A stretch of 63,663 nt of DNA, counting the filler, from Octopus bimaculoides (lineage: Eukaryota), in assembly GCF_001194135.2 (NCBI RefSeq). It is 10 parts of 10 records of this genome, joined end to end, with 100 filler letters (N's around TTAATTAATTAA, not from the genome) between each part and the next. Parts side by side here need not be neighbours in the genome. Positions count along the whole stretch, not along the records: positions 60,163 to 61,611 come from NC_068994.1; 9 more parts are not named here. The stretch is one strand, 5' to 3'. Below are positions 60,163-60,766 of the stretch, in pieces (within the stretch, counting starts at the first letter, position 1; each line of letters starts with the position of its first letter). The notes under the pieces are model-generated. The model was given only the letters and a program-made list of their open reading frames with translations. It was not told where the DNA came from and ran no database searches. Both the position numbers and the translations under genes were made by a program.

Positions 60163-60766
60163 GTCCATTCTTTATACTTTCCATTACTTCGTAATTGTGT
60201 TGTTCCTGACTTCTTGTTAGATCGAATATAACAATTCTTTGTCCATTGTACATATATTTAATGTCTAGACTTCTTCCATTTTCGAAACGAATTCCGTCTC
60301 GAGTTTCTATGTATCTTGATAGGTACGTTTTTCCGCTGTTAACTACTGGATCTGAATACCATATTATTTTCCGTTCGTTAGGCTCTTGTTGCAGCTCATC
60401 GATTAACTCCTGTTGCCACTTTCTCCAGGAACTGTTTTTGTATTTCTCTTTTATCTTTTCTTAAGTCATTAACTGCTGATTCTCACTCCATAATTTTTCA
60501 ATCGCACGTACATTGGATTTTTAAGCGTTTATAGTATCGCTATCGTCCCTTCTTAGGATGTACTGCTCAGGGTTGTTGTCTGTTGATTTAATTATTTCTC
60601 TTATGGTTTCATTGGTTTTCTTATTTTTTCCACTTTCAATTGTTTCTCCCTTTGTAAAGTAGTCTCCTTTTTTACAATACTCTATATTTTGTTTTTCCGA
60701 TCCTTTCGCCATTTCTATGTGTACTCTCGGTGATATTCTTATCTTCATAGCCTTAAGACTAACTCG
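60163..60766 (-). pseudogene. rep: Endogenous CRESS-DNA virus Rep (HUH motif III plus SF3 helicase)
   Basis: One frame: RVHIEMAKGSEKQNIEYCKKG...WRKWQQELIDELQQEPNERKIIWYSDPVVNSGKTYLSRY...NGRSLDIKYMYNGQRIVIFDLTRSQEQHNYEVMESIKNG; stops at 60521-60523 and 60461-60463; runs into a gap. Confidence 0.9.

What the first reader, a model, noticed from the sequence alone, without database searches (positions are those of the whole stretch)
60163..60766. Endogenous circular ssDNA (CRESS) virus Rep in an apparently cephalopod genome
Reading through two stops gives ~200 codons with no frameshift. It includes RCR motif III (HIEMAKGSEKQNIEYCKK), the WQxxL...PxxRKIIW linker, Walker A (DPVVNSGKT, first Gly apparently changed to Val, 60326-60343) and Walker B (IVIFD, 60221-60235), followed by NYEVMESIKNG. 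The helicase signature (SLDI..Y...IVIFD..R....NY...E..KNG) recalls nanovirus/alphasatellite-like and related unclassified Reps more than circoviruses. It shares an ungapped contig with spliceosomal ankyrin exons and a SINE tail remnant (~60851-60880), which argues for true integration rather than contamination. Motifs I/II are absent, motif C would fall in the gap, and no capsid or origin is visible. It would be a fossil record of ssDNA virus exposure of the germline.
Basis: partly seen in the sequence, partly recalled or inferred. Interest (0 to 1): 0.85.

Follow-up and report, generated by a model that had tools for sequence, protein, structure and literature searches.

The report
Decayed ssDNA-virus Rep gene in octopus-like DNA
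This is a broken, front-truncated copy of the replication gene of a small circular single-stranded DNA virus, embedded in octopus-like host DNA; it is a real viral fossil, but of a kind already well documented in animal genomes.

Summary
On the minus strand, 60769 to 60164 reads as 202 codons in one frame with two in-frame stops and no frameshift. It carries HUH motif III, a damaged Walker A and an intact Walker B at the coordinates given.

tblastn with a full-length Rep from a circular ~2.26-kb metagenomic genome (Rep, opposed Cap-like ORF, stem-loop origin) gives E 1e-40 over Rep residues 73-277 of 319. A profile search finds 184 relatives, nearly all on 1.2-3.5-kb contigs. There is no plasmid match.

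The closest relatives (60-86% amino-acid identity) are Octopus bimaculoides and O. vulgaris proteins. The O. vulgaris copies lie on 78- and 100-Mb chromosome records. The window copy and nine octopus-type copies form one clade (NJ bootstrap 84/100).

Copies differ about 0.2/0.1/0.5 at codon positions 1/2/3, so they diverged under coding constraint. I infer several separate integrations of related viruses.

The "SINE tail" is only T-rich low-complexity sequence. The ankyrin "exons" are a 238-bp tandem array of damaged, unannotated pseudo-exon-like units.

Verdict: a genuine endogenous CRESS-virus Rep pseudogene, a new member of a known kind, of modest interest.

The parts
60164..60769 (-). Rep pseudogene fragment of a CRESS-DNA virus (202 codons). 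It is 5'-truncated, so the first ~70 codons with HUH motifs I and II are missing. It is cut at its 3' end by the piece edge. Breaks counted: 2 in-frame stops, 0 frameshifts, 2 one-codon in-frame deletions relative to clade-mates, and 1 substitution at an invariant Walker A column.
   Evidence: Translation. tblastn of P0009 against the piece: E 1e-40, Rep residues 73-277 of 319. 13 sequence hits and 184 profile hits. Alignments A1 and A2.
60659..60769 (-). Domain bound within the pseudogene: C-terminal remnant of the HUH endonuclease domain, containing motif III (YxxK type).
   Evidence: Pfam PF02407 Viral_Rep, profile positions 51-81 of 82, E 1.2e-3, below the gathering score. PDB phmmer aligns it to the motif III region of porcine circovirus 2 Rep nuclease domains. 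Alignment to P0009 residues ~70-113 and the structure model.
60428..60658 (-). Domain bound within the pseudogene: helical linker between the nuclease and helicase domains.
   Evidence: Aligns to P0009 residues ~114-190, which are helices H125-182 in the pLDDT-93 model.
60164..60427 (-). Domain bound within the pseudogene: N-terminal two thirds of the SF3 helicase domain (Walker A, Walker B). Motif C and the arginine finger lie beyond the piece edge.
   Evidence: Alignments A1 and A2. Paralogues and relatives hit PF00910. The fold of P0009's C-terminal half matches SF3 helicases: papillomavirus E1, AAV Rep40 and Vientovirus Rep.
60770..60934 (.). AT-rich spacer (29% G+C) with no identifiable feature.
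   Evidence: No tRNA. No Rfam family near threshold. No significant repeats. The only match to octopus DNA is a T-rich low-complexity stretch. The flank is not homologous to the flank of another copy that starts at almost the same Rep position.
60935..61611 (-). Tandem array of 2.8 units of 238 bp. Each unit holds an ankyrin-repeat-like reading stretch with splice-like borders (CACAG ... GTAAGT). It is host-type eukaryotic sequence and runs off the piece edge. Unit 1 is intact, unit 2 lacks the donor-like site, and unit 3 has a 1-base indel and a stop.
   Evidence: TRF: period 238, 88% matches, score 1046. Pfam Ank E ~1e-5, above cut-off. The exon-like length is 161/160 nt, not a multiple of 3. 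The exon-like and intron-like parts are equally diverged (0.90 vs 0.91). No predicted protein shares three 5-residue words with it.

Best explanation
Positions 60164-60769 (minus strand) are an endogenous viral element. It is a 5'-truncated, decayed copy of the Rep gene (HUH endonuclease plus SF3 helicase) of an unclassified CRESS-DNA virus (phylum Cressdnaviricota). It is fixed in the germline DNA of an octopus-type cephalopod, next to a degenerate ankyrin-like tandem array.

It belongs to a clade of Rep-derived copies found so far only in octopus genomes and in Logan read-run assemblies of undetermined species.

Mechanism (inferred, not shown): double-stranded replicative-form or fragmentary viral DNA was captured into a chromosome. 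This happened either by non-homologous repair or by Rep's own nicking-joining activity. The copy either entered already lacking the first ~70 codons or lost them later. It then lost coding constraint and now has no replication function.

Copies differ from each other mostly at third codon positions. The family is therefore best explained by several separate integrations from a long-lived, octopod-associated virus lineage, rather than by one insertion copied inside the genome. That step is also inference.
For: Shown:
- The frame, motifs and coordinates.
- tblastn of full-length Rep P0009 against the piece gives E 1e-40 and 39.5% identity over 205 aa.
- P0009 is encoded on ~2.3-kb contigs recovered in four assemblies, with an opposed ~310-aa ORF that has an arginine-rich N-terminus. 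One contig has a 144-nt terminal overlap, so it is circular at ~2.26 kb. It also has a stem-loop presenting CAGTATTAC.
- The profile search gives 184 hits at E<=1e-5, nearly all with PF02407 on 1.2-3.5-kb contigs. Named hits are Cyanoramphus nest associated circular X DNA virus, Crucivirus sp. and Cressdnaviricota sp..
- 35 IMG/VR contigs of 2.0-3.4 kb carry relatives.
- The P0009 model (pLDDT 93) matches CRESS Reps in BFVD (E down to 9e-33). In PDB it matches circovirus and nanovirus nuclease domains plus SF3 helicases.
- The closest relatives are octopus proteins: O. bimaculoides XP_014788809.1, and O. vulgaris CAI9733846.1 and CAI9729859.1. The O. vulgaris ones lie on 78-Mb and 100-Mb records, one between two 7tm_1 genes.
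- The window plus nine octopus-type copies form one clade (NJ, bootstrap 84/100).
- Codon-position differences between the window and other copies are 0.19-0.22 / 0.05-0.12 / 0.49-0.54.
- Two stops in 200 sense codons imply only ~5% neutral change since constraint was lost (95% range 0.6-18%, crude).
- Copies have different truncation points and non-homologous flanks.
Against: - The species of the window could not be determined. No exact ORF of the piece is on record, and the ankyrin-like flank has no close protein relative. For this particular locus, host linkage therefore rests on contiguity within a 1.45-kb piece.
- No exogenous virus falls inside the octopus clade; the best IMG/VR identity is 58-60% in the helicase. 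The postulated octopod virus lineage is thus unsampled.
- The same codon-position pattern would arise if the copies were duplicates of a selected host gene family.
- The window and one other copy (L003) begin at almost the same Rep position. That hints at a shared truncated ancestor or a preferred breakpoint.
- The NJ tree is simple and built from partly non-overlapping fragments.
Confidence: 0.85

Rival explanations
1. The window copy is a dead duplicate of a domesticated host gene family. One ancient Rep integration was co-opted in octopods, chiefly its SF3 helicase half plus a new C-terminal extension. It was duplicated inside the genome under purifying selection, and some duplicates, including this one, later decayed.
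For: - Uninterrupted helicase-only ORFs exist in two species: P0014 in O. bimaculoides and P0007 in O. vulgaris. They are 88% identical over 258 aa.
- Octopus copies share a ~120-aa C-terminal extension that exogenous Reps lack.
- Coding constraint is seen in the helicase part and, more weakly, in the extension.
- All octopus-type copies are monophyletic and no exogenous virus lies inside the clade.
Against: - Constraint is also seen on the nuclease-remnant and linker part between the window and L003 (0.19/0.12/0.54). A helicase-only host gene would not need that part.
- One O. vulgaris copy still carries motif I, so full-length Reps entered the genome.
- Flanks of different copies are not homologous.
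- Expression and orthology of the intact ORFs were not tested.
Confidence: 0.2
2. The copies are remnants of a resident Rep-encoding mobile element. This would be a rolling-circle-type transposon using a Y1 HUH plus SF3 Rep, amplifying inside cephalopod genomes. The window would hold one truncated copy.
For: - The family is multi-copy and dispersed, with coding constraint between copies.
Against: - No shared termini, inverted repeats or homologous flanks among copies.
- Copies are 66-85% identical at the DNA level, not the high identity of a recent burst.
- Only a handful of copies were seen.
- Each copy is truncated differently.
Confidence: 0.06
3. This is not an integration. A free CRESS virus or other contaminant was chimerically assembled next to host DNA.
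For: - The piece is only 1.45 kb, and its host flank could not be matched to any known protein or species.
- CRESS sequences are known reagent and sample contaminants (rengasvirus report PMC8103869, listed).
Against: - The Rep is truncated, has two stops and a damaged Walker A, and lacks Cap and origin. That is unlike a replicating genome.
- Its nearest relatives by far are genomic octopus copies on chromosome-scale records.
- The sequence is ungapped across the junction.
Confidence: 0.03
4. It is a Helitron, bacterial plasmid Rep or host AAA+ ATPase fragment rather than a viral Rep.
For: SF3 helicases belong to the wider AAA+-like ASCE fold. Weak PDB fold matches to RuvB and ClpB appear far down the list.
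Against: - No plasmid match at E<=1e-3 in 72,556 plasmids.
- Motif III of a Y1 HUH nuclease is fused to an SF3 helicase (PF02407 plus PF00910 in relatives). This is not the Pif1-type SF1 helicase of Helitrons (established knowledge).
- Relatives sit on 2-3.5-kb circular genomes.
Confidence: 0.01

Closest known systems
Rep-derived endogenous viral elements of circular ssDNA viruses in eukaryotic genomes (Liu et al. 2011, PMC3198968; later surveys such as Zhao, Lavington and Duffy 2021, cited from memory)
   Same: A virus Rep gene fragment is fixed in host chromosomal DNA. It is truncated, carries stops, has no capsid gene or origin, and is multi-copy in the host lineage. Some copies are uninterrupted and possibly expressed.
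   Different: The host group is octopods. I found no paper in the searchable library describing cephalopod CRESS EVEs. The octopus copies also share a C-terminal extension not seen in exogenous relatives.
Octopus Rep-like proteins already in databases: O. bimaculoides XP_014788809.1 / A0A0L8I7L6 (P0014/P0003); O. vulgaris CAI9729859.1 (P0007) and CAI9733846.1 (P0005)
   Same: They belong to the same clade. Amino-acid identity to the window peptide is 60-86% over the shared parts, with the same helicase motifs.
   Different: Those are called as uninterrupted ORFs and extend through motif C and a C-terminal tail. The window copy is interrupted, keeps part of the nuclease domain that P0007 and P0014 lack, and sits at a different locus. 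DNA identity is only 66-78%.
Uncultivated circular CRESS-DNA virus represented by Rep P0009 (contigs L008-L011), and Cyanoramphus nest associated circular X DNA virus Rep (P0038)
   Same: Homologous along the whole window fragment (40% and 35% identity, ~100% coverage). The order is the same: motif III, linker, Walker A, Walker B.
   Different: Those are complete Reps (motifs I-III, full helicase) on ~2.3-kb circular genomes with a Cap-like ORF and a nonanucleotide stem-loop origin. The window has none of that context.
Nanoviridae master Rep and Alphasatellitidae Rep (Banana bunchy top virus M-Rep A0A1V0QHH8; BBTV alphasatellite 2 Rep Q8QTK9)
   Same: These are the first classified viruses in the BFVD fold ranking of the closest full-length relative (ranks 20 and 29, E ~1e-24 to 3e-23). 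They have the same two-domain architecture.
   Different: Sequence identity is only 26-27%, and nineteen unclassified Reps rank higher. Membership was not shown.
Circoviridae Rep (porcine circovirus 2, Muscovy duck circovirus; PDB 5xor, 6wdz, 7kii)
   Same: The motif III region of the window aligns to the PCV2 nuclease domain. The nuclease domain of P0009 superposes with TM 0.82-0.90.
   Different: The window-to-PCV2 sequence match is weak (E ~0.02) and confined to the motif III region. The helicase does not reach Pfam or PDB thresholds against circovirus Rep. No named circovirus species is in the BFVD top 50.

Membership tests
CRESS-DNA virus Rep (Cressdnaviricota; Y1 HUH endonuclease + SF3 helicase) | HUH endonuclease motif I (FTxNN type) | tested here: not met
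   Absent from the window; Rep homology begins at about Rep residue 70. Present in relatives P0009-P0011 and in the O. vulgaris copy L001, so the loss is a truncation of this copy.
CRESS-DNA virus Rep (Cressdnaviricota; Y1 HUH endonuclease + SF3 helicase) | HUH motif II (HxQ/HUH) | tested here: not met
   Absent from the window for the same reason. No trace in any frame of 60770-60934.
CRESS-DNA virus Rep (Cressdnaviricota; Y1 HUH endonuclease + SF3 helicase) | Motif III with the catalytic tyrosine (YxxK) | tested here: met
   The YCKK string at 60668-60679 aligns with motif III of PCV2 Rep, with P0009, and with PF02407 profile positions 51-81.
CRESS-DNA virus Rep (Cressdnaviricota; Y1 HUH endonuclease + SF3 helicase) | SF3 helicase Walker A (P-loop) | tested here: inconclusive
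   The motif is present at the homologous place (60326-60352). It carries one substitution at a column invariant in 50 relatives. It is recognisable but probably not functional.
CRESS-DNA virus Rep (Cressdnaviricota; Y1 HUH endonuclease + SF3 helicase) | Walker B | tested here: met
   IVIFD at 60221-60235. The F and D columns are invariant in alignment A2.
CRESS-DNA virus Rep (Cressdnaviricota; Y1 HUH endonuclease + SF3 helicase) | Motif C and arginine finger | not testable with these tools
   They lie beyond the piece edge at 60163. They are present in paralogues P0014, P0007, P0005 and P0004.
CRESS-DNA virus Rep (Cressdnaviricota; Y1 HUH endonuclease + SF3 helicase) | Significant end-to-end homology to Reps encoded on small circular genomes with a stem-loop origin | tested here: met
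   tblastn E 1e-40. The circular ~2.26-kb genome has a nonanucleotide stem-loop and an opposed Cap-like ORF. There are 184 profile hits and 35 IMG/VR contigs of 2-3.4 kb.
Endogenous viral element (germline-integrated virus fragment) | Virus-derived sequence physically continuous with host chromosomal DNA | tested here: inconclusive
   The fragment is continuous, without gaps, with an AT-rich spacer and an ankyrin-like tandem array of eukaryotic type. The flank could not be assigned to a species or gene. Paralogues are unambiguously chromosomal in O. vulgaris.
Endogenous viral element (germline-integrated virus fragment) | Loss of viral genome context and disabling changes | tested here: met
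   No Cap and no origin. The copy is 5'-truncated, with 2 stops, 2 one-codon deletions and 1 substitution at an invariant Walker A column.
Endogenous viral element (germline-integrated virus fragment) | Orthologous insertion shared by related host species or individuals | not testable with these tools
   No eukaryotic genome collection can be searched by DNA here. Exact-ORF look-ups found nothing.
Nanoviridae / Alphasatellitidae Rep | Phylogenetic placement within the family; high similarity to M-Rep or alphasatellite Rep | tested here: inconclusive
   These are the first classified BFVD hits for relative P0009, but at 26-27% identity and behind 19 unclassified Reps. No reference-based phylogeny was possible. 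This is a resemblance, not membership.
Circoviridae Rep | Phylogenetic placement within the family; helicase of circovirus type | tested here: not met
   Only the motif III region matches PCV2, at E ~0.02. No named circovirus species is in the BFVD top 50; the one 'Circoviridae sp.' entry is a metagenomic label.
Helitron RepHel | Y2 HUH nuclease fused to a Pif1-type SF1 helicase | tested here: not met
   The helicase is SF3: PF00910 in relatives, with fold matches to E1, AAV Rep and CRESS Rep. That Helitrons use a Pif1-type helicase is established knowledge.
Ankyrin repeat (flanking array) | Match to the 33-residue ankyrin profile above the curated cut-off | tested here: met
   PF00023: 26.1 and 26.2 bits against a cut-off of 21.1 for two units. 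Whether the units are functional exons was tested and not supported.

The most novel reading that the evidence does not exclude
The octopus-type Rep clade is not only a set of fossils. It would include a co-opted host gene: an SF3-helicase-only protein with a lineage-specific Cys-rich, coiled-coil-like C-terminal extension, kept intact in at least O. bimaculoides and O. vulgaris. Alternatively, it reflects a still-active octopod-resident Rep-encoding element. In either case the window copy would be a decayed by-product of that family.
Probability: 0.12. Interest if true: 0.6.

Novelty: new member of a known kind. Interest (0 to 1): 0.3.

Why it matters
Most CRESS-DNA viruses are known only from metagenomes and have no assigned host. 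Integrated Rep copies are among the few sequence-only clues to past hosts, as shown for Entamoeba and Giardia (PMC7493932).

This fragment and its clade-mates tie one unclassified CRESS lineage to octopods. That lineage's nearest free relatives are ~2.3-kb circular genomes from environmental samples. The clade also suggests repeated germline exposure rather than a single event.

For cephalopod biology it adds a small, datable marker family. It also points to two uninterrupted helicase-only ORFs that deserve an expression and selection check.

It does not reveal a new mechanism or a new kind of element.

Tried and rejected
- Exact-sequence look-ups of two window ORFs, intended to find the source contig or species, found nothing.
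- A protein search with one ankyrin-like unit found no candidate sharing three 5-residue words, so the flank could not be tied to any annotated gene.
- The 'SINE tail' did not hold up. There is no tRNA and no Rfam family near threshold; the PVT1_3 and RNase P hits are far below their gathering scores. The only match to octopus DNA is a T-rich low-complexity run.
- An origin-like stem-loop or inverted repeat next to the Rep was looked for and not found.
- tblastn with the Cap-like protein of the closest circular genome found nothing in the piece or in the octopus loci.
- I considered a splice-acceptor reading of the T-rich tract plus AG just upstream of the Rep fragment, which would make an ankyrin-Rep fusion transcript. 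It remains untested because no expression data are available. The ankyrin units themselves cannot be joined in frame (161 nt).
- An attempt to identify the SRR11869384-91 runs through the literature found nothing.
- Five searches for papers on cephalopod CRESS EVEs found none. One apparent hit was 'thale cress'.
- A single-protein scan of IMG/VR with P0014 gave only one weak hit. The first alignment was too diverse to scan with. A tighter alignment worked.
- My Nei-Gojobori script gave synonymous proportions above saturation, so I report raw codon-position differences instead of dN/dS values.

Full report
**Observation.** The piece is 1,449 bases (60163-61611) without gaps.
- On the minus strand, one frame runs from 60769 down to 60164. 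It spans 202 codons with two in-frame stops and no frameshift. The five other frames of the same stretch carry 6-19 stops.
The motif III string is at 60668-60721, the Walker A core at 60326-60343, Walker B IVIFD at 60221-60235 and NYEVMESIKNG at 60164-60196.
- The frame is cut by the piece edge at 60163. Motif C, the arginine finger and the C-terminus therefore cannot be examined.

**What it is.**
- Pfam alone is weak. Only the last 31 positions of PF02407 (Viral_Rep) match, at E 1.2e-3 and below the gathering score.
- PDB sequence search aligns the same ~30 residues to the motif III region of porcine circovirus 2 Rep, at E ~0.02.
- Homology searches are decisive. The stop-marked peptide finds 13 proteins, down to E 2e-65.
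- tblastn of the full-length Rep P0009 (319 aa) against the piece gives E 1e-40 and 39.5% identity over 205 residues, covering Rep residues 73-277.
- A profile of the first hits finds 184 proteins at E<=1e-5. Nearly all carry PF02407 and sit on 1.2-3.5-kb contigs. The named ones are the Reps of Cyanoramphus nest associated circular X DNA virus, Crucivirus sp. and Cressdnaviricota sp..
- IMG/VR holds 35 related contigs of 2.0-3.4 kb.
- There is no match in 72,556 plasmids.

**The relatives are real circular ssDNA viruses.**
- P0009 was recovered in four independent assemblies on ~2.3-kb contigs, opposed to a ~310-aa ORF with an arginine-rich N-terminus.
- One contig has a 144-nt terminal overlap, which makes it circular at ~2.26 kb. 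It also has a GC-rich stem whose loop presents CAGTATTAC, the canonical CRESS origin type.
- An AlphaFold model of P0009 (pLDDT 93) shows an N-terminal nuclease fold, a helical linker and a P-loop helicase.
- In BFVD it matches CRESS Reps, with E down to 9e-33.
- In PDB it matches circovirus and faba bean necrotic yellows virus nuclease domains (TM 0.79-0.90). It also matches the SF3 helicases of papillomavirus E1, AAV Rep and Vientovirus Rep.

**Host context and the octopus clade.**
- The closest relatives of the window peptide are octopus proteins.
  - O. bimaculoides A0A0L8I7L6 / XP_014788809.1: 86% identity over the shared half.
  - O. vulgaris CAI9729859.1: 82%.
  - O. vulgaris CAI9733846.1: 60%.
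- The O. vulgaris genes lie on records of 100 Mb and 78 Mb. One lies between two 7tm_1 receptor genes.
- Further fragmentary copies occur on Logan contigs from runs SRR11869384-91, whose species I could not determine.
- In a neighbour-joining tree of 123 sequences, the window copy and nine octopus-type sequences form one clade. Bootstrap support is 84/100 in a 50-taxon resampling.
- No IMG/VR contig exceeds 58-60% identity in the helicase, so no free virus falls inside this clade.
- Other host-sized contigs also carry relatives. These are Mytilus edulis (794 kb) and ENA contigs of 421 kb and 5.4 Mb.

**History inferred from the copies.**
- DNA identity between the window and the other copies is only 66-78%.
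- The differences are strongly skewed by codon position. They are 0.19-0.22 at first, 0.05-0.12 at second and 0.49-0.54 at third positions against L002, L003 and L006.
- The skew holds for the nuclease-remnant and linker part as well as for the helicase. The lineages therefore separated while the whole Rep was under coding constraint.
- By contrast, two stops in 200 sense codons imply only ~5% neutral change since constraint was lost (95% range 0.6-18%). This follows from 6.6% of single-base changes creating a stop, and it is a crude estimate.
- Copies are truncated at different points. One O. vulgaris copy keeps motif I but lacks the motif II region. Another begins at the helicase.
- Flanks are not homologous.
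- The simplest reading is several independent integrations from a long-lived octopod-associated virus lineage. This is inference.
- A selected host gene family is the main rival. Its support is:
  - two uninterrupted helicase-only ORFs that are 88% identical between species;
  - a ~120-aa C-terminal extension shared by octopus copies and absent from free Reps;
  - constraint within those ORFs.

**State of the window copy.**
- The gene is broken by a 5' truncation (about the first 70 codons, including motifs I and II) and by two in-frame stops.
- It also has two one-codon deletions relative to its clade-mates and one substitution at a Walker A column that is invariant in 50 relatives.
- There are no frameshifts.
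- Capsid-like sequence and an origin-like hairpin are absent from the piece.
- It cannot encode a working Rep.

**Flanks.**
- Positions 60770-60934 are AT-rich (29% G+C) and featureless.
It is not supported.
- Positions 60935-61611 are 2.8 copies of a 238-bp unit (88% matches). Each unit contains an ankyrin-like stretch (PF00023 above cut-off) bounded by CACAG and GTAAGT.
- Several points argue against working exons:
  - The exon-like part is 161 nt, so adjacent units cannot be spliced in frame.
  - One unit lacks the donor-like site, and one has an indel and a stop.
  - The exon-like and intron-like parts are equally diverged (0.90 vs 0.91).
  - No predicted protein among 5.8 billion shares three 5-mers with it.
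- I read it as a tandemly duplicated exon-plus-intron fragment. It is eukaryotic in style, which fits a host flank, but it is not proof of a working gene.

**Classification.**
- For the closest full-length relative, the first classified BFVD hits are banana bunchy top virus M-Rep and a BBTV alphasatellite Rep (26-27% identity). They rank behind 19 unclassified CRESS and crucivirus Reps.
- No named circovirus species appears in the top 50.
The lineage is best called unclassified Cressdnaviricota.

**Novelty.**
[quoted passage not shown] - I found no paper in the searchable library on cephalopod CRESS EVEs. However, the octopus proteins already carry automatic Rep or SF3-helicase names.
- This is therefore a new member of a known kind. 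The finding is genuine but of modest interest.
- The more interesting lead is the pair of uninterrupted helicase-only ORFs with a shared extension.

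Noticed in passing
L002:6001-6801 (O. vulgaris OX597824.1) and protein P0014 (O. bimaculoides XP_014788809.1): Uninterrupted helicase-only Rep-derived ORFs occur in two octopus species. They are 88% identical over 258 aa and share a ~120-aa Cys-rich, coiled-coil-like C-terminal extension that free viral Reps lack. 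Codon-position differences indicate coding constraint. This is a possible co-opted gene.
   Followed up: partly
L001:25338-26480 (O. vulgaris OX597828.1): This Rep-derived copy still shows HUH motif I but lacks the motif II region, followed by a long open helicase plus extension. The database gene model for it (P0005) spans 20 kb.
   Followed up: partly
window 60935-61611: A 238-bp tandem array of ankyrin-like units has splice-like borders. The exon-like part is 161 nt, the units are unequally damaged, and the 'exon' and 'intron' parts are equally diverged. No related predicted protein was found.
   Followed up: yes
window 60743-60775 vs L003:600-640: The window copy and an independent Logan copy begin Rep homology at almost the same codon, just after where motif II would be, yet have unrelated upstream flanks. 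In the window a T-rich tract plus AG precedes this point. This could be a coincidence, a preferred breakpoint or a splice-acceptor-like site.
   Followed up: partly
L013:1200-3594 (ENA ERZ26052378, 5.4-Mb contig); L012:2674-3408 (ENA ERZ26859061, 421-kb contig); P0048 (Mytilus edulis, 794-kb contig): Related Rep-like stretches lie on host-sized contigs from other, partly unidentified organisms. L013 holds at least two Rep-like stretches within ~2.3 kb. This suggests that the Rep lineage has endogenised in other marine animals too.
   Followed up: no
L008 (JGI 3300023284 contig, 2404 nt): The closest free relative is a circular ~2.26-kb genome. It has a 144-nt terminal overlap, a stem-loop presenting CAGTATTAC, and a Cap-like ORF with an arginine-rich N-terminus. 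The same Rep was recovered in four assemblies.
   Followed up: partly
window 61249-61352 and 61487-61590: Sub-threshold Rfam matches to PVT1_3 (about 20 bits against a gathering score of 45) recur once per ankyrin-like unit. I judge them to be chance matches repeated by the tandem array.
   Followed up: no
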